Of a stretch of DNA of 64,000 nt, positions 2,094 through 8,850 are shown in pieces. The position numbers and the translations under genes were made by a program. The notes under the pieces are model-generated. The model ran no database searches and had not been told where the DNA came from. It was given only the letters and a program-made list of their open reading frames with translations. The stretch is from the sequence record NC_061449.1; one strand, given 5' to 3'. How positions within the stretch are numbered: position 1 is the first letter of the stretch; the number at the start of each line of letters is the position of its first letter.

Positions 2094-5000
2094 ATGGCAA
2101 AAACGAACAACAAGGCTGAGAAAAAAGCTGAGAAGAAAGCTAAAGTCAAAGCCTCTAAGTCGAAGGACAAAGCAGTCGCCTCTGATGATATCGGTGGCGT
2201 TGAAGTATTAGGCTTTGACCTCGGCAGCATGATGGATGACGTGCTCGACGGCATCGAAAAGAAAACGAAAGTAAGTTCTGCCGATGCAGCACGACACGCA
2301 CCTCGCATCTCTACTGGTGTGCTCGCGCTTGATATGTACCTTGACGGCGGTATCGTACCTGGCGGTTGGTACACGTTCAGCGGCGGTGAGCAGTCGTGTA
2401 AGTCAACCATGACCATGAGTATCATGGCGAGTCTGATTCGTCTGAAATACTCTGGCATTAGCGTAGTGTTCGACTACGAAGGTTCGACAGATGCTGAATA
2501 CGTTGCTGGTCAGCTCAAAACGTTCGGTGTTAAAGTCGATCCGAAAACAATCTTCGGTGTGCGTGACGAAGACGGCTCGTGGATTATCAAGCCTAAGATT
2601 CGTTACTATGCACCAGACAATGGTGAGCGCTTCTTCGATTATATGTCGATGCTGCGTCGTCGTCTGCCTGACAAGATCGTAGAGAAAGACGGCTCTGCGT
2701 ATTACCTCTTTGAGAACAACAAAGAGAACGCGAAGAAGCTGGCTGGTAAGTACGACAAGAAGTGGTTCAGTCGTAACAACCAATTCAAAGTTCCTGCTGC
2801 TGATGGCCACATGCAAGCGGCTGTTATCGTTGACTCCTATCCGGCAATGCTGCCTGATCAGGTAGATGACGATGACGGTTCAAAAGCAATGGCACTGCAA
2901 GCGCGTATGTTCTCTGACGGCATCAAACGTTTCCGTGGTGGTATGCGTCGTAAGATGATGACCATCGTTGGCGTTAACCAGTTGCGTCAGAAGCCTGCTG
3001 TAATGTTCGGCTGTTTACATGGAAAGACGCTGGTACCATTCGTTGACGGTCGTGTTCTCCGCATGAAAGATATTGTGGATAATAAGATTGAAGGTGAAGT
3101 GTGGTCATACAACGAAGATAATCGTCAGATTGAACCGCGTCGCATTACTGCATGGCACCACAACGGCAACGTTGAAGATCAGTCGCATTGGATGCGCATT
3201 ATCACCCAATGCCCTGAAACTGCTAACGGACAGGCTTCCGTCACGGTGACTCCTAACCATGAAATTCTGACTGACCGTGGTTGGAAACGTGCTGACGAGA
3301 TCACAATGACTGACCGAGTTGTGTCGAAGTACACGTCAGTGCGTACTGGCTCCCTTGCTAAGTTCCTGAATGCTGTCGCTGTAGGCGATAGCTCGATGGT
3401 TGCGGATAGCCCGAACAGCGGCCTGTTGAAATTCCAGGATAACAACAACCCGGACTACGTTCTGTGGAAGATTGGTAAACTGGAAAATCACTTCGAGTTT
3501 GAATCCTATTCAGCTTCGCATGGCGGCGAGTGCTACATTGCTCGTGGTAGCGACTTTGTTGCTTACTCAAAGCAGGTGCCTGAGCGTGAGCCGTGGAAAG
3601 TTAAGTTTGATGACCTGTCGTTTGCTGTGTTCTACATGGACGACGGTACTCTGAAAACTGATCGCAAGAACGCCCTGTTTAGCATCAAGCGCTTTAAAGG
3701 CGATACTGCCGCCCTTGATTCGATTCATGCGATGTTTGCCGAACATGGCTTTGCGGTTAACTACAATCCTGACGACGGCTGTTTCTGGATGAACTTGAAT
3801 GAAAGTGATAGCTTCTTCCAGCGCATTCGTAAGTACGTGCCTGACTGTATGCAGTACAAACTGCCTGCTGAACATCAGGGCTTCTACGAAGAATTTGAAC
3901 TCGAAGGTCAAGAGCATGTGCGTCCAGTTTACGTACCTGTGATCGGCATCGAGCCTGGTTCTAAGAAAGCATTCCAGATGAAGGGCAAGTACGATATTAC
4001 TGTTGATAACAACCACAACTACATGGTTGGCAATTCGGCGAACGGAATCATCGTCCATAATAGTCCCGAATATGAGCCGGGCGGTGATGCGTTGAAGTTC
4101 TACTGCTTCGACCGCGACACTCTGATTCGTACTGACCACGGCGTGTTGACTGCACCGCAGATCAAAGAGCTGATGGAAGCTGGTACCGAAGTTCGTGTTG
4201 AATCGTTCGACGGTTATCAGAAGATTCAGGGTGCGTGGAAAGTTGATGACGCTCCGTTCCCAATCGAAATGAATGCTGGTGGTCACACATACATCGGCAG
4301 CGCAGAGCACCGTCAGTTCACGTTCATGTATGACTGGACAGCAGAAGGTATGATGGTTCTGCGTCCTGAGTGGAACACACTCGACCAGCTTGCTAAGTGG
4401 CCTGATAAGAAGGGTCAGTATGCAGGTCTGCGTGTACCGCCAGTGAAAGAACTGAAACAGAACGTGCCTGATGCGTTCGACGAAGCGAGCCAGCTTGTTC
4501 GTAATCTTCTCGGTAACTGCGATCCGGTTAGTGTGCAACTGCCTCTGGTGACTGACGGCGATACTACCTACGCTGCAAACGTGCTGACCATTGATATGGT
4601 TGGCGAAAGCACTGACGTGTCTGACTTCTCGTTCTGGGCTAAGAAGCTGCTGGATATCGGTGTGTACGCATACGCTGACGAAAGCGGTCTGCACATGCCT
4701 GGCCTGAACAAGTACGAGCTGACGCAAGCCGTAGAGCAATACGCTGAGGGTGAGTTTGTGGGTCTGTCGTTTGAGGCCACCAGCCGTCAACGTCAAACGC
4801 AGATGCTGACTGTTATCGCTGATGTGTTCCCTGAACTGACTCGCTATGTTCTGGACTATCAGTTGCAGACAGGTGATGATAAAATCTATCTTGCACCTGA
4901 GCAGGACTTCGCACAGGCTCTCGACCTGATTCTGCATAAGCAGATTGAAGGCTACGATGACATGTACGACCTGCTGATGACTCAGCTTGCCTACGTTGAA

Positions 5001-5669
5001 GACTGGTTCAACTTCGACAACTCGATTCTGCCTGTGCCGTTCACTCTGAAAGCTCTCGACAAGCCTGTTGAGTTCTGGGACGTGAATGTTGACGAAACCT
5101 CTGTGGTAATCACTAACGGTTTCGTATCGCATAACAGTGACGTGCGTGTTCGTCTGGCCTCTCGTGCAGTACCTGAAGGTTGGCCGAAGCTCAAAGACGC
5201 GCCTGGCGTTGTTGGTGAGAAGTCTGTTACTGTTGAAGGTGGTACTGACCGCTATCGTTTCATCGCTGCTAAGACCATCAAGAACAAGATGGGCGGCATC
5301 CCTAACCAGAGCACTTGGCTGCGTCTGTGGGAAGCTGATGGTAATGGTGAAGCGCGTGGTTTCGACCCAGTGTTCGATACGTGGCACTATCTGAAAGTTC
5401 TCGGCCTGATCAACGGTACTCGTAAGAACTTCAAGATCAAAGCGCCATGTCCTCTTGCATCCGAAGTCAAGATGGACTGGGATGACTTCCGTACTCTTAT
5501 CAACGGCAGCAAAGAACAAGTCGTTGCTGTCTGTAAGAAACTGAAAGTCAAACCTGCAGGTCTGCGTCTGTGGTGCTTCAAGTTTGTGCAGTCTGCCAAA
5601 GGCAAAGAAATGTTGAAAGCGTCTATCAGTAAGTCTGCGAAGTCTTCTGATGACGGTGACGACGAGTAA
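2094..5669 (+). CDS. recA: RecA/UvsX-family recombinase precursor with two inteins (predicted spliced product 497 aa)
   Basis: ISTGVLALD, Walker A variant GGEQSCKST, Walker B VIVDS, MALQARMFS, VNQLRQK..VMFG, SPEYEPGGDALKFY, SDVRVRL, KTIKNK. Confidence 0.93.
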   Translation: MAKTNNKAEKKAEKKAKVKASKSKDKAVASDDIGGVEVLGFDLGSMMDDVLDGIEKKTKVSSADAARHAPRISTGVLALDMYLDGGIVPGGWYTFSGGEQSCKSTMTMSIMASLIRLKYSGISVVFDYEGSTDAEYVAGQLKTFGVKVDPKTIFGVRDEDGSWIIKPKIRYYAPDNGERFFDYMSMLRRRLPDKIVEKDGSAYYLFENNKENAKKLAGKYDKKWFSRNNQFKVPAADGHMQAAVIVDSYPAMLPDQVDDDDGSKAMALQARMFSDGIKRFRGGMRRKMMTIVGVNQLRQKPAVMFGCLHGKTLVPFVDGRVLRMKDIVDNKIEGEVWSYNEDNRQIEPRRITAWHHNGNVEDQSHWMRIITQCPETANGQASVTVTPNHEILTDRGWKRADEITMTDRVVSKYTSVRTGSLAKFLNAVAVGDSSMVADSPNSGLLKFQDNNNPDYVLWKIGKLENHFEFESYSASHGGECYIARGSDFVAYSKQVPEREPWKVKFDDLSFAVFYMDDGTLKTDRKNALFSIKRFKGDTAALDSIHAMFAEHGFAVNYNPDDGCFWMNLNESDSFFQRIRKYVPDCMQYKLPAEHQGFYEEFELEGQEHVRPVYVPVIGIEPGSKKAFQMKGKYDITVDNNHNYMVGNSANGIIVHNSPEYEPGGDALKFYCFDRDTLIRTDHGVLTAPQIKELMEAGTEVRVESFDGYQKIQGAWKVDDAPFPIEMNAGGHTYIGSAEHRQFTFMYDWTAEGMMVLRPEWNTLDQLAKWPDKKGQYAGLRVPPVKELKQNVPDAFDEASQLVRNLLGNCDPVSVQLPLVTDGDTTYAANVLTIDMVGESTDVSDFSFWAKKLLDIGVYAYADESGLHMPGLNKYELTQAVEQYAEGEFVGLSFEATSRQRQTQMLTVIADVFPELTRYVLDYQLQTGDDKIYLAPEQDFAQALDLILHKQIEGYDDMYDLLMTQLAYVEDWFNFDNSILPVPFTLKALDKPVEFWDVNVDETSVVITNGFVSHNSDVRVRLASRAVPEGWPKLKDAPGVVGEKSVTVEGGTDRYRFIAAKTIKNKMGGIPNQSTWLRLWEADGNGEARGFDPVFDTWHYLKVLGLINGTRKNFKIKAPCPLASEVKMDWDDFRTLINGSKEQVVAVCKKLKVKPAGLRLWCFKFVQSAKGKEMLKASISKSAKSSDDGDDE
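3012..4061 (+). mobile_element. Intein 1 (350 aa) with LAGLIDADG homing endonuclease, inserted after VMFG (L2 loop)
   Basis: Begins CLHGKTLV, block B VTPNHEILT, ends IIVHN before Ser; LAGLIDADG-like LNAVAVGDS and FAVFYMDDG. Confidence 0.93.
4104..5135 (+). mobile_element. Intein 2 (344 aa), inserted after ALKFY; endonuclease motifs not recognisable
   Basis: Begins CFDRDTLI, block B-like GSAEHRQF, ends VDETSVVITNGFVSHN before Ser. Confidence 0.88.
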
Positions 5670-6141: not shown

Positions 6142-6206
6142 ATAAAGAGTGGGAGGCATACTCCCACATCTTCTCACTCGATAGGCCAACGTGCCAGGAG
6201 TAACTA

Positions 6207-6917
6207 ATGAATAAATATCATTTCGCTCATGTACCTAATCAGGACATGTTCTCGGGTTTAGTTCACGGTTCTTTTCACGCATTACGTGCGCACGAACAGA
6301 ACAACCCAAACAAACACCAACTCGCAGTCGTGTACGTCGATATAACCGCACATGCTGCAACGTCTGCGCTGTATGCTATTCTCAAGCGCTCACATATTCA
6401 AGGGATGTTGCCTACGGCCTACATTGATAATCACTCTGTTCGCGGCTTTACTGCTGCGCGTGAGTTCTCTGTGTTCCTGTCACCGAGTCTTAACTACGTC
6501 GATCAAAAACAACTCGGTGAGGACCTGCTTCGATTCTTCGATGCTGTGGAGAAGGCCTCTCAAAGCGGCAACTCTTTCATTGGTGTGTATACAACGTCCG
6601 AAAGTCTGAGTATCATCTCAAATCTGCGTGACGCCGCGTATGGACGCTATCTCAGCTCTGAATTTGGTCACACTTCTCTAGGTGCTGATGGAGTGCAGTC
6701 TAACCTTGCATTCAAAGACGCGTTTAATTTGATTAATGGTGTTGACCAGTTGCATGACAGTCCGTGTCAAACAGTCATACTCGGTGACGACTATCTCAAT
6801 CTTAGTATGTCAGCGATAGGCACTCTCATTCGTATCTGCGAAGATGCAGGTAAGAAGTATGTTCTCGGACGTAATCTGCACCGCGAATACTTCATGAAGA
6901 AGATCTGTAAATACTGA
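6207..6917 (+). CDS. Hypothetical protein, paralogue of 8083..8850
   Basis: AGGAG RBS; N-terminal AHVPNQDMF...VHGSFHALRAHEQN aligns with AYIPDMGSF...VRSLCHMARALENN. Confidence 0.75.
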   Translation: MNKYHFAHVPNQDMFSGLVHGSFHALRAHEQNNPNKHQLAVVYVDITAHAATSALYAILKRSHIQGMLPTAYIDNHSVRGFTAAREFSVFLSPSLNYVDQKQLGEDLLRFFDAVEKASQSGNSFIGVYTTSESLSIISNLRDAAYGRYLSSEFGHTSLGADGVQSNLAFKDAFNLINGVDQLHDSPCQTVILGDDYLNLSMSAIGTLIRICEDAGKKYVLGRNLHREYFMKKICKY

Positions 6918-6965
6918 TCACCAACCGAACACAAATGCTGTGTGTAGTCTAGCCTGAATTGGGCA

Positions 6966-6999
6966 GGGGAGAGCCGGATGGCCTCCCCATTTTTTTTTT
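6966..6999 (+). terminator. Intrinsic terminator-like hairpin with long T tract
   Basis: GGGGAGAGCC-GGAT-GGCCTCCCC followed by A and ten T. Confidence 0.7.
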
Positions 7000-7014
7000 G
7001 TCTGAGGGTTTTCT

Positions 7015-8037
7015 ATGTCTGAAAAAGCAACATTCGTCCAAGTGCATGAGGCCTACTTACAAGAGTCTGCCTCTCGCGGTGCAGCACGATCAAAGATAAC
7101 CGATCACTTCACTACGTACCTGAAAAAGAACAACGGCAAGCTCCCTCCACTCGGAATCCCTATGGAAGAGTTTGTTCGTTGGGCCAATATGATCCCAACA
7201 GAAATCAATCCTGACATAGCCCGTCAGCTAATGTTTATTTCGTCAGCGACCTATACGCATTACGTTTGGTCTTTTACGAAAGCATCGTTTGTAATTGAGA
7301 AGGAGCTGTGGCCACATCTGATTGATGGTGATGCACCTAAAGTGTTGCCGACCTCTACGCTGCGTCAATTACCTCACTGGTCGCAGTGGATCAATTGTGT
7401 GTTCACGCTTGAATACAAACACGCCACTACAGGTAACAGATACGAAATTGATATTGAAGGCTTCTGGGCAACCTACGTCAACTACCAAGAGGCAACTCAC
7501 CTGAGCTTGTCCTGCTTAGGTGTGTATAATGACGGCACAGGCAATCAAGTAATGTCGCTCTACATCATGTTCGACATTACCAAAGACATGGAACTGTCTG
7601 ACGGTTTCGATTGGTTCATGCACCTTGTAGGCGCTAAAGGCGCAACGGGTGTTGACATTAATTCTGACAACGGCCATGAGGTCAATGAGGCTGTCATGGC
7701 TCTCATGAAGCCTGTCGTTAACGTGCTGCTGTTTGTTGCATCGCAGGTAGACAACATCTATAAAGGAGGAATCAAATCACTCAAACCCAGACGTAGCGGT
7801 AACAGTTACAAAATCATTCCTGTTCGTGATGTTCGTGAGTGGAATGTGGGTACAGAGTTGCTTAATGAAATTCGTACCTATGAAAGCGAAGTGAAATCTC
7901 ATGAATCAAATGGTCGTCGTGCGCATATACGCAGAGGCCATCATCATAGTTATTGGTACGGACCTTTAAAGGGTGAGCGTGAGTTGAAGTCACGCTGGGT
8001 ACCACCATGTGTTGTTCGCGGCACTATCGCAGAATAA
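7015..8037 (+). CDS. AcrVA2/FinQ-family protein homologue
   Basis: Colinear motifs with the AcrVA2 sequence as I recall it: LPTSTLRQLPHW, IEGFWATY, LLFVASQVDNIYKG, WNVGTELLNEIRTYES, RRAHIRRGHHHSYWYG...RWVPPCVV; similar length (340 aa). Confidence 0.8.
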   Translation: MSEKATFVQVHEAYLQESASRGAARSKITDHFTTYLKKNNGKLPPLGIPMEEFVRWANMIPTEINPDIARQLMFISSATYTHYVWSFTKASFVIEKELWPHLIDGDAPKVLPTSTLRQLPHWSQWINCVFTLEYKHATTGNRYEIDIEGFWATYVNYQEATHLSLSCLGVYNDGTGNQVMSLYIMFDITKDMELSDGFDWFMHLVGAKGATGVDINSDNGHEVNEAVMALMKPVVNVLLFVASQVDNIYKGGIKSLKPRRSGNSYKIIPVRDVREWNVGTELLNEIRTYESEVKSHESNGRRAHIRRGHHHSYWYGPLKGERELKSRWVPPCVVRGTIAE

Positions 8038-8082: not shown

Positions 8083-8850
8083 ATGAAATCTCGTGTACAA
8101 CATGCGTATATCCCTGATATGGGATCGTTTGACCCTTACGTCCGCTCTCTGTGCCATATGGCGCGAGCACTGGAAAATAATGGCCTGAACTACGGCAAGT
8201 CAAAGCCTGTCGTGATCATCGGCACTTCGAAACGCGTAGTTGAAGCCTATGTTAAGCAGTTACTCAACACAAACAATCTACCGCACACTCTCATTTGCTT
8301 TGGCGTAGACGAACCTCCTGTCAGCCATCGTGACTACACCTACGCCGGTGCCCATGTTGTGCTGATGCACGATCTGACCTATGTTTGCAGCGACACAATG
8401 AACAAGGTTGCCACACGCGTTCTCGAAATCATCGACAGCCTGAAACAGAAAGAAGGTGATACTGACCTCAAAAACAGTGAGCTGTCTTTGGTTTACTCCA
8501 ACCCACATTTGTGGTCTGCTATTCTTGACTACGGCGCTGCTTCGTTTATGAACATGGGTGGTCGTAACATCGAATACCGCAGCGGCTTGGTTTCATCTAT
8601 CGGCCTCGACGCGTTAATGAAGTGCGAAAGCAATCAAGAATACCATGAGCTTCGAGCCGAAACTATTACGATCGGCCTGGAGTTCTTCTGCATACGTACA
8701 GACTACCTGCTGTCCAAGGTGCATAACCTGTTGTGGTCACTCGCGTGTGATGACTGCAAGTTCAAAAAGAACCATCGCATCATCTTCCACGAAGACTTCC
8801 GCCGCTTGTTCTTTGAAGAATACATTCTAAGGGACTTCAAGGGCTTTTAA
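8083..8850 (+). CDS. Hypothetical protein, paralogue of 6207..6917
   Basis: GGAGG RBS; shared N-terminal motif and LxYV segment. Confidence 0.75.
   Translation: MKSRVQHAYIPDMGSFDPYVRSLCHMARALENNGLNYGKSKPVVIIGTSKRVVEAYVKQLLNTNNLPHTLICFGVDEPPVSHRDYTYAGAHVVLMHDLTYVCSDTMNKVATRVLEIIDSLKQKEGDTDLKNSELSLVYSNPHLWSAILDYGAASFMNMGGRNIEYRSGLVSSIGLDALMKCESNQEYHELRAETITIGLEFFCIRTDYLLSKVHNLLWSLACDDCKFKKNHRIIFHEDFRRLFFEEYILRDFKGF

What the first reader, a model, noticed from the sequence alone, without database searches (positions are those of the whole stretch)
7015..8037. AcrVA2/FinQ-family homologue in a lytic phage of a host unlikely to carry Cas12a
Seen: five colinear motifs matching AcrVA2 as I recall it (TPTSIFLNLPDW, IKGFWAIY, LLWLC..DITYKG, IGERLGSEVRRYQS, RPHIRRGHWHGYW..RWQP). 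The counterparts here are LPTSTLRQLPHW, IEGFWATY, LLFVA..NIYKG, VGTELLNEIRTYES and RAHIRRGHHHSYW..RWVP. Established: AcrVA2 blocks Cas12a biogenesis by recognising the nascent polypeptide and triggering mRNA decay, and plasmid FinQ is a homologue that represses F transfer genes. Inference: this homologue silences a different, unknown nascent host protein such as another defence system, which would be an undescribed target for co-translational silencing.
Basis: partly seen in the sequence, partly recalled or inferred. Interest (0 to 1): 0.85.

Follow-up and report, generated by a model that had tools for sequence, protein, structure and literature searches.

The report
AcrVA2-family gene in Erwinia jumbo phage
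The gene is a genuine, intact relative of the anti-CRISPR AcrVA2 in a jumbo phage of Erwinia amylovora; its target is unknown, and such relatives in hosts without Cas12a are already described, so it is a new member of a known family.

Summary
Observation confirmed. ORF 7015-8037(+) (340 aa) is gene pEaSNUABM17_00246 of Erwinia phage pEa_SNUABM_17, a 264-kb Alexandravirus. All five quoted motifs are in it. AcrVA2 is its only PDB relative: E 8e-10 alone, 9e-54 as a family profile over the full length. A pLDDT 91 model matches only the AcrVA2 crystal structures (E 5e-12). The residues shown by mutation to matter are kept: W85, H304, R306 and H309; D89 is E95 here.

The gene is under purifying selection (dN/dS 0.05-0.10). 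It sits at one syntenic site behind SSB and UvsX in at least four jumbo-phage genera. Within Alexandravirus it is exchanged as a cassette: flanks are 90-98% identical while the gene is 29% identical, and homology breaks at the ORF ends. The C-terminal part is the most conserved and the central sheet the least.

The host has type I-E CRISPR, with no Cas12a reported. A non-Cas12a target is therefore likely but not shown. That idea, the FinQ link and the occurrence in megaphages are already published (Marino et al. 2023 preprint, Nature 2026). Verdict: new member of a known kind, moderate interest.

The parts
7015..8037 (+). AcrVA2-family ORF, 340 aa plus stop (pEaSNUABM17_00246, annotated 'hypothetical protein')
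   Evidence: ORF and annotation. (AcrVA2 is the only PDB sequence hit, E 8e-10 alone and 9e-54 as a profile). (model pLDDT 91.4; fold matches only AcrVA2). (PHROG 6160, unknown function, E 6e-72). (dN/dS 0.05-0.10).
7015..7329 (+). N-terminal helical region (residues about 1-105). Contains W85, the counterpart of AcrVA2 W79, and E95, the counterpart of D89.
   Evidence: Secondary structure of the model. Alignment to AcrVA2. Column counts: W in 60 of 61 family representatives; D 41 and E 9 of 61 at position 95. The region boundary is my reading of the model.
7330..7902 (+). Middle domain (residues about 106-296): a large antiparallel sheet (123-213) plus helices. It is the most divergent part between phage alleles and is inferred to be the target-recognition part.
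   Evidence: strands 123-213, helices 220-295. (residues 121-215 are only 17-45% identical between allele classes). The role is inferred from the AcrVA2 literature.
7903..8034 (+). C-terminal beta domain (residues about 297-340). It is the most conserved part and is inferred to be the ribosome-associating, decay-triggering part.
   Evidence: strands 304-334. (residues 271-340 are 40-79% identical between classes). (invariant R306, H309, G316, W328). (the review of Marino 2026 says the C-terminal part associates with ribosomes and polysomes).
7924..7941 (+). H-I-R-R-G-H motif (H304, R306, H309), the counterpart of AcrVA2 H286, R288 and H291
   Evidence: aligned; PDB chain numbering is +1 relative to the paper. 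(H286A, R288A and H291A diminish activity). (H 60/61, R 61/61, H 61/61 in family representatives; 13/13 in the phage alleles).
6966..6999 (+). Terminator-like hairpin (6966-6988, -18 kcal/mol) followed by T10 (6990-6999), directly upstream of the ORF. It lies inside a linker (6882-7004) that stays conserved between phages with different alleles.
   Evidence: z -1.98. (linker 89-94% identical). (a run of five or more T in about 10 of 42 intergenic regions). Function is inferred.
7004..7008 (+). Shine-Dalgarno-like GAGGG, 6 nt before the ATG
   Evidence: read directly from the sequence.
6207..6917 (+). g245, a 236-aa ORF of unknown function. It is a second, independently swapped hypervariable cassette and a paralogue of g247.
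   Evidence: 25-30% identity to the seven relatives that have a match, none found in Yoloswag or SNUABM_5, while the flanks are conserved.. (hhalign 97.9%, E 3.5e-13 against g247).
8083..8850 (+). g247, a 255-aa ORF of unknown function. It is a paralogue of g245 and is conserved (84-99%) in four of the five Alexandravirus loci compared (SNUABM_33, SNUABM_1, AD1, SNUABM_16), but only about 61% in SNUABM_32 and about 64% in phB78, which is assigned to the genus but not to a species.
   Evidence: (family found only on contigs of this jumbo-phage group). (model pLDDT 71.8; no significant fold match).

Best explanation
The ORF encodes a functional member of the AcrVA2/FinQ protein family. By analogy with AcrVA2, I propose that its conserved C-terminal domain, carrying H304, R306 and H309, docks on translating host ribosomes. 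Its variable N-terminal and middle domains would recognise a short peptide in a particular nascent protein. That recognition would trigger decay of the mRNA being translated, through a recruited cellular RNase, so the protein is never made. Erwinia amylovora is reported with type I-E CRISPR and not Cas12a, so the target is most likely something else. It could be a host immunity protein, another strain-variable host protein, or a protein of a competing element, made after infection starts. The gene is a fixed-position but cassette-swapped locus in these jumbo phages. I read the deep allele classes as different target specificities built on one common effector domain. Shown here: family membership, fold, retention of the functional residues, purifying selection, cassette exchange and the domain-wise conservation pattern. 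Inferred: ribosome binding, nascent-chain recognition, mRNA decay, and the identity and kind of the target.
For: Sequence and profile homology to AcrVA2 only. Fold match to AcrVA2 only. W85, H304, R306 and H309 are kept and near-invariant in 61 representatives and 13 phage alleles; these are the residues whose mutation weakens or abolishes AcrVA2 activity. dN/dS is 0.05-0.10 among alleles 91-96% identical. There is one copy at the same site in all 64 matching phage records. Against pEa_SNUABM_1 the flanking genes are 90-98% identical but this gene is 29%, and DNA homology ends at the ORF start and resumes 40 nt before its stop. The C-terminus is 40-79% identical between classes and the central sheet 17-45%. 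This mirrors the published AcrVA2/FinQ pattern and the reported C-terminal ribosome association. The host is described with type I-E CRISPR plus a type I-F remnant. Homologues are typically found without Cas12a.
Against: There is no functional datum for this protein or for any phage homologue outside Moraxella. The target is unknown and nothing points to a defence system specifically. A strictly syntenic, universally retained gene beside the SSB and UvsX genes looks more like a core life-cycle function than a typical accessory anti-defence gene. No known anti-defence or Aca-like neighbour was detected. D89 of AcrVA2 is E here. Absence of Cas12a from the host rests on the literature, not on a search made here. 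A biogenesis blocker does nothing against protein already present in the cell, which limits its use to a lytic phage unless the target is induced or turns over quickly.
Confidence: 0.55

Rival explanations
1. Same biochemical mechanism, but the target is not host immunity. The protein silences a gene of a competing mobile element, such as a resident plasmid, a prophage or a co-infecting phage, as plasmid FinQ does to F transfer genes.
For: FinQ, the other characterised homologue, lowers mRNA of F-plasmid transfer genes. Unrelated jumbo phages of the same hosts also carry family members: RisingSun and JA13, with FBKp24 in Klebsiella. Cassette swapping fits any arms race.
Against: Nothing in the locus indicates a competitor target. 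A lytic jumbo phage kills the cell quickly, so blocking conjugation brings little obvious gain.
Confidence: 0.12
2. Same mechanism, used for host take-over. It shuts off synthesis of a particular housekeeping or stress protein, for example a protease, an RNase or a regulator, and is a core life-cycle function rather than counter-defence.
For: The gene is universally retained at one syntenic position next to SSB and UvsX across at least four genera. It is under strong purifying selection.
Against: A conserved housekeeping target would not explain allele classes only 27-31% identical within one genus, nor replacement of the gene by recombination at its borders.
Confidence: 0.15
3. It is a bona fide anti-Cas12a protein, like AcrVA2 itself.
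For: Family membership and retention of all effector residues.
Against: E. amylovora is described with type I-E and a type I-F remnant only. Family members are typically in Cas12a-less bacteria. Identity to AcrVA2 is only about 16% in the structural alignment, and the recognition domains are the most divergent part. There is no acr-aca operon context.
Confidence: 0.03
4. The AcrVA2 fold is used here for something unrelated to translation-coupled mRNA decay, for example plain stoichiometric binding and inhibition of a protein, or a role in phage DNA metabolism suggested by its neighbours.
For: The mechanism is established for one family member only. AcrVA2 also binds mature apo-Cas12a and an internal Cas12a peptide. 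The gene lies next to recombination genes.
Against: The residues that specifically serve mRNA down-regulation, and not binding, are the invariant ones across the family. In AcrVA2 binding alone is not inhibitory.
Confidence: 0.12
5. It is a decaying or non-functional remnant.
For: None beyond the lack of annotation.
Against: The ORF is intact in all 13 loci examined. dN/dS is 0.05-0.10, the motif residues are invariant, and the model is high-confidence.
Confidence: 0.01

Closest known systems
AcrVA2 (Moraxella bovoculi prophage anti-CRISPR; PDB 7CI1/7CI2; Marino et al. bioRxiv 10.1101/2022.11.29.518452, Nature 2026)
   Same: Full-length profile homology (E 9e-54), the same three-part fold, and the same conserved W and H-x-R-x-x-H residues. 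The C-terminal domain is the most conserved part. Both are encoded by a phage.
   Different: About 16% identity in the structural alignment. This one is in a lytic-type jumbo phage rather than a prophage. There is no AcrVA1-like partner gene or Aca gene nearby. The host has no reported Cas12a. The recognition domains are highly diverged, so a different target is expected. D89 is E.
FinQ (fertility-inhibition protein of I-like and F-like E. coli plasmids)
   Same: According to Marino et al. it belongs to the same family, shares the conserved C-terminal HxR motif, has a non-Cas12a target, and lowers mRNA of specific genes of another element.
   Different: FinQ is plasmid-borne and acts on F tra genes. 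A direct comparison could not be made here: tblastn of this protein against 72,556 plasmids found only one weak hit, in a Nitrosomonas plasmid.
AcrVA2-like ORF43 of Shewanella phage vB_SbaS_Y11 (PMC10846135), and AcrVA2-like proteins of huge phages (PMC7162821)
   Same: These are family members in phages without integrase or in huge phages, in hosts that have type I-E rather than type V-A systems. All are annotated by homology only.
   Different: Different phage lineages. Cassette exchange and a fixed syntenic site were not described for them.
PHROG 6160 (unknown function) and Pfam PF26125
   Same: The protein matches PHROG 6160 at E 6e-72 over its whole length. Its relatives carry a precomputed PF26125.1 hit.
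   Different: Neither carries a function in the libraries at hand. PF26125 is not in the local Pfam copy, so its name could not be read.

Membership tests
AcrVA2/FinQ protein family | Significant full-length sequence or profile similarity to AcrVA2 | tested here: met
   phmmer E 8.2e-10 as the sole PDB hit. The profile of 61 relatives gives E 9.1e-54 covering residues 3-319 of 323.
AcrVA2/FinQ protein family | AcrVA2 fold: helical N-terminal domain, sheet-rich middle domain, small beta C-terminal domain | tested here: met
   Model pLDDT 91.4. Foldseek against the PDB finds only 7ci2_A, 7ci1_B and 7ci1_A at E 5e-12 to 6e-11, probability 1.00, TM 0.49-0.57. The next hit has E 0.04.
AcrVA2/FinQ protein family | C-terminal H-x-R-x-x-H (AcrVA2 H286, R288, H291), required for mRNA down-regulation | tested here: met
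   H304, R306 and H309 align to it. Counts are 60/61, 61/61 and 61/61 in family representatives and 13/13 in phage alleles.
AcrVA2/FinQ protein family | Conserved N-terminal W79 and D89 | tested here: met
   W85 is kept (60/61). D89 is the conservative E95; the column has D 41 and E 9 of 61, and E in 10 of 13 jumbo-phage alleles.
AcrVA2/FinQ protein family | Encoded on a mobile genetic element | tested here: met
   The window is 100% identical to Erwinia phage pEa_SNUABM_17.
AcrVA2/FinQ protein family | Associates with ribosomes or polysomes and triggers translation-dependent decay of a specific mRNA | not testable with these tools
   Known for AcrVA2 only. It needs expression and fractionation data.
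Type V-A anti-CRISPR (functional class) | The host carries Cas12a | tested here: not met
   Literature only: E. amylovora has type I-E cas genes with CRR1 and CRR2, plus a type I-F remnant array.
Type V-A anti-CRISPR (functional class) | Lies in an acr locus with other acr genes or an HTH Aca regulator | tested here: not met
   The neighbours are SSB, an intein-bearing UvsX and ORFs without Pfam, PHROG, NCBIfam or PADLOC matches.
Type V-A anti-CRISPR (functional class) | Inhibits Cas12a interference | not testable with these tools
   No functional data.
FinQ (plasmid fertility inhibition) | Direct similarity to FinQ itself | not tested
   No tool retrieves FinQ by name. NCBIfam has no FinQ model hit. 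tblastn against plasmids gave one Nitrosomonas hit. The link rests on Marino et al..
FinQ (plasmid fertility inhibition) | Plasmid-borne and inhibits conjugative transfer | tested here: not met
   The gene is in a phage genome. The activity is not testable.

The most novel reading that the evidence does not exclude
In these jumbo phages the AcrVA2-family gene is a fixed 'socket' that holds interchangeable specificity cassettes. Each deep allele class (at least two within Alexandravirus, five or more across the related genera) would read a different nascent host protein, for instance different inducible defence proteins of Erwinia or Dickeya strains, while sharing one ribosome-docking effector domain. 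This would be a natural library of peptide-specific, co-translational gene silencers used by lytic phages.
Probability: 0.3. Interest if true: 0.75.

Novelty: new member of a known kind. Interest (0 to 1): 0.4.

Why it matters
AcrVA2 is the only bacterial example of a protein that destroys an mRNA after reading the nascent peptide it encodes. The open question left by that work is what the roughly 1,800 homologues in Cas12a-less bacteria act on. This locus does not answer it. It does offer a clean natural comparison: cultured, sequenced phages that are over 90% identical around the gene but carry alleles 29% identical, with the effector residues intact. Descriptive comparison of infections by such isolates could reveal non-Cas12a targets. 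On the practical side, the gene is labelled 'hypothetical protein' in all 13 phage loci inspected and could be annotated as an AcrVA2-family protein, not as an anti-CRISPR.

Tried and rejected
- The local Pfam copy, NCBIfam and PADLOC gave no meaningful hit for the ORF or its neighbours. The sub-threshold hits (Skunalike_TailTerm, Cass2, FinO) are far below their cut-offs, so I treated them as chance.
- The word-indexed protein search found only 4 relatives with the single sequence and 7 with the profile, and none carried a name. Cluster look-ups gave only 'hypothetical protein'.
- tblastn against plasmids found one weak hit, so there is no direct route to FinQ.
- The Nature 2026 paper is not in the library. 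Its content is known here only through a 2026 editorial.
- A search for 'PF26125' in papers found nothing.
- The sigma-70 promoter scan was at the shuffle expectation. A k-mer search of 42 intergenic regions found no shared promoter-like motif, so the expression class of the gene could not be inferred.
- There are no Rfam families or tRNAs in the window. No repeats bracket the cassette, so there is no sign of a transposon-like or integron-like mobility mechanism.
The second ran, but the fold search was inconclusive, with only weak resemblance to RecA-like alpha/beta domains (E about 0.01, probability 0.54 or less). The idea that g245 and g247 are the RNase partner was therefore dropped for lack of evidence. 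They are also absent from the FBKp24 and JA13 contexts.
- Checking the AcrVA2 residues that contact the internal Cas12a peptide (E98, D129, D195) was abandoned. The alignment there is loop-rich, and that interface is reported as dispensable in vivo.

Full report
**Identity of the window and the ORF**

- The window is 100% identical to the last 64 kb of Erwinia phage pEa_SNUABM_17. This is accession MZ443777.1, 263,916 bp, genus Alexandravirus, host Erwinia amylovora, isolated from stream water in Korea.
- ORF 7015-8037(+) is locus tag pEaSNUABM17_00246, annotated 'hypothetical protein'.
- It is intact and ATG-started. A GAGGG lies 6 nt upstream of the ATG.

**Is it an AcrVA2 relative?**

Yes, by three independent tests.

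- Single sequence: against all PDB sequences it hits only AcrVA2 (7ci1/7ci2), E 8.2e-10, residues 72-335.
- Exhaustive HMMER search: a search of 1.84 billion cluster representatives found 963 relatives at E <= 0.001.
- Profile: a profile of 61 of those relatives (A1) hits AcrVA2 at E 9.1e-54 over essentially its whole length.
- Structure: an AlphaFold2 model built on that alignment is confident (pLDDT 91.4, pTM 0.89). In the PDB it matches only the AcrVA2 chains at E 5e-12 to 6e-11, probability 1.00. The next hit is at E 0.04.
- Other libraries: the protein also matches PHROG 6160, of unknown function, at E 6e-72. Its relatives carry a precomputed PF26125 hit. That model is not in the local Pfam copy, so its name is unknown to me.

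**Functional residues**

- Marino et al. report that W79A and D89A weaken AcrVA2. H286A, R288A and H291A abolish down-regulation of Cas12a while still binding it.
- The tool alignments use PDB numbering, which is +1 relative to the paper. In them these residues correspond to W85, E95, H304, R306 and H309 here.
- In the 61 representatives the columns read W 60/61, D 41 with E 9, H 60/61, R 61/61 and H 61/61.
- In 13 jumbo-phage alleles W, H, R and H are 13/13.

**Is it a live gene?**

- All 13 loci examined have an intact ORF.
- Among the four alleles that are 91-96% identical, dN/dS is 0.05-0.10 with dS up to 0.84. This indicates strong purifying selection.

**Context and evolution**

- Gene order: the order is SSB, then UvsX/RecA with intein, g244, g245, the AcrVA2 homologue, then g247, g248 and g249.
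- Synteny: the upstream part (SSB, UvsX, the g245 homologue, this gene) is conserved in Alexandravirus, Sasquatchvirus (Y3), Yoloswagvirus, Rivsvirus (pEa_SNUABM_5) and the unclassified pEa_SNUABM_21 group. Yoloswag lacks a g244 counterpart, and Yoloswag and pEa_SNUABM_5 lack g247.
- Copy number: all 64 matching phage records have exactly one copy, and the window has only one.
- Divergence against the flanks: compared with pEa_SNUABM_1, the flanking proteins g244, g247, g248 and UvsX are 90-98% identical. The homologue is 29% identical and g245 is 26%.
- Breakpoints: against SNUABM_1, AD1 and SNUABM_16, nucleotide homology stops at 6196 for SNUABM_1 and AD1 (6035 for SNUABM_16). It returns for the short linker 6882-7004, stops again at the ORF start, and returns at 7996, 40 nt before the stop codon.
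- Independence of the two cassettes: pEa_SNUABM_33 shares this AcrVA2-type allele (95%) but has a different g245 (30%). The two genes are therefore exchanged separately.
- Allele classes: Alexandravirus holds at least two deep classes, 27-31% identical to each other. The class found here is closest to that of Sasquatchvirus Y3, at 55%.
- Where divergence falls: residues 271-340 are 40-79% identical between classes, while residues 121-215 are only 17-45% identical.
- Agreement with the literature: this matches the published statement that AcrVA2 and FinQ resemble each other in the C-terminal domain and diverge towards the N-terminus. It also matches the report that the C-terminal part associates with ribosomes and polysomes.
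- No repeats bracket the cassette.

**Neighbours**

- g245 and g247, on either side of the gene, are paralogues of each other (hhalign probability 97.9%, E 3.5e-13).
- Their family was found only on contigs of this phage group.
- It has no PDB sequence relative and no significant fold match.
- It is absent next to the homologues of Klebsiella phage FBKp24 and Dickeya phage JA13. I therefore do not treat it as an obligate partner.
- A hairpin of -18 kcal/mol followed by T10 lies between g245 and the ORF. This suggests a transcript boundary or a regulated read-through. No promoter could be recognised.

**Host and literature**

- E. amylovora is described with a type I-E system flanked by CRR1 and CRR2, plus a type I-F remnant array. 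Cas12a is not mentioned.
- Alexandravirus isolates were reported without lysogeny-related genes.
AcrVA2 triggers translation-dependent loss of cas12a mRNA by recognising the N-terminal nascent peptide. FinQ is a homologue that lowers F tra mRNA.
- The 2026 Nature version is known here only through an editorial. It adds ribosome and polysome association through the C-terminus and recruitment of a cellular enzyme.
- AcrVA2-like proteins of huge phages were noted in 2020.
- An AcrVA2 homologue in an integrase-free Shewanella phage, with a type I-E system in the host genus, was reported in 2024.

**Mechanism proposed**

- Most likely, at about 0.55: the protein is a ribosome-associated, nascent-peptide-specific trigger of mRNA decay, aimed at a protein other than Cas12a.
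- The kind of target is open. Cassette-style allele replacement argues for a variable, conflict-type target, either host immunity or a competing element.
- Universal retention of the gene next to the recombination genes argues for a core take-over role.
- A biogenesis blocker cannot remove protein that already exists. In a lytic phage the target should therefore be induced on infection, turn over quickly, or be needed late.

**Verdict**

- This is a new member of a known kind.
- The interest is moderate. It lies in the natural allele series at a fixed locus, not in the existence of the homologue.

- The AcrVA2 letters I reasoned with were those printed.
- No repaired or consensus sequence was built or used.

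Noticed in passing
window 2094-5669 (+); extra insert at about 3015-4049: The UvsX/RecA-like recombinase is 1191 aa here against 830-842 aa in pEa_SNUABM_1, pEa_SNUABM_33, AD1, Y3 and Yoloswag. The difference is an extra insert of about 345 aa at residues about 308-652, which matches Pfam Intein_splicing (residues 315-656). The relatives share only the second, downstream insert, so this phage seems to carry one more intein than its relatives.
   Followed up: partly
window 6207-6917 and 8083-8850 (+): The two genes flanking the AcrVA2 homologue are paralogues of each other (hhalign 97.9%). The family was found only in this jumbo-phage group and has no recognisable fold or function. The upstream copy is itself a hypervariable, independently swapped cassette. 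Its allele in this phage is at most 30% identical to all 10 others compared, which resemble each other much more.
   Followed up: partly
window 6882-7004: A short linker stays 89-94% identical between phages whose genes on both sides are only 26-30% identical. It contains a terminator-like hairpin plus T10, and the Shine-Dalgarno-like GAGGG begins at its 3' edge. It may be the recombination anchor for cassette exchange.
   Followed up: partly
BFVD hit A0A223LH45 (Erwinia phage vB_EamM_RisingSun); L012 5938-6912; L013 5848-6891: AcrVA2-fold proteins also occur in jumbo phages that share no detectable synteny at this locus, or belong to other lineages, and infect the same or related hosts: RisingSun, Dickeya JA13 and Klebsiella FBKp24. 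The RisingSun protein is named 'putative mycothiosynthase', which looks like a misannotation.
   Followed up: no
protein P0003: A 51%-identical homologue is labelled 'MAG: Raoultibacter sp.' on a 9.2-kb contig. It is probably a phage contig binned into a bacterial MAG.
   Followed up: no
whole window 1-64000: All 90 annotated CDS are on the + strand and are called 'hypothetical protein'. There are no tRNA genes and no Rfam family at gathering score. Most ORFs downstream of the locus have no PHROG match.
   Followed up: partly
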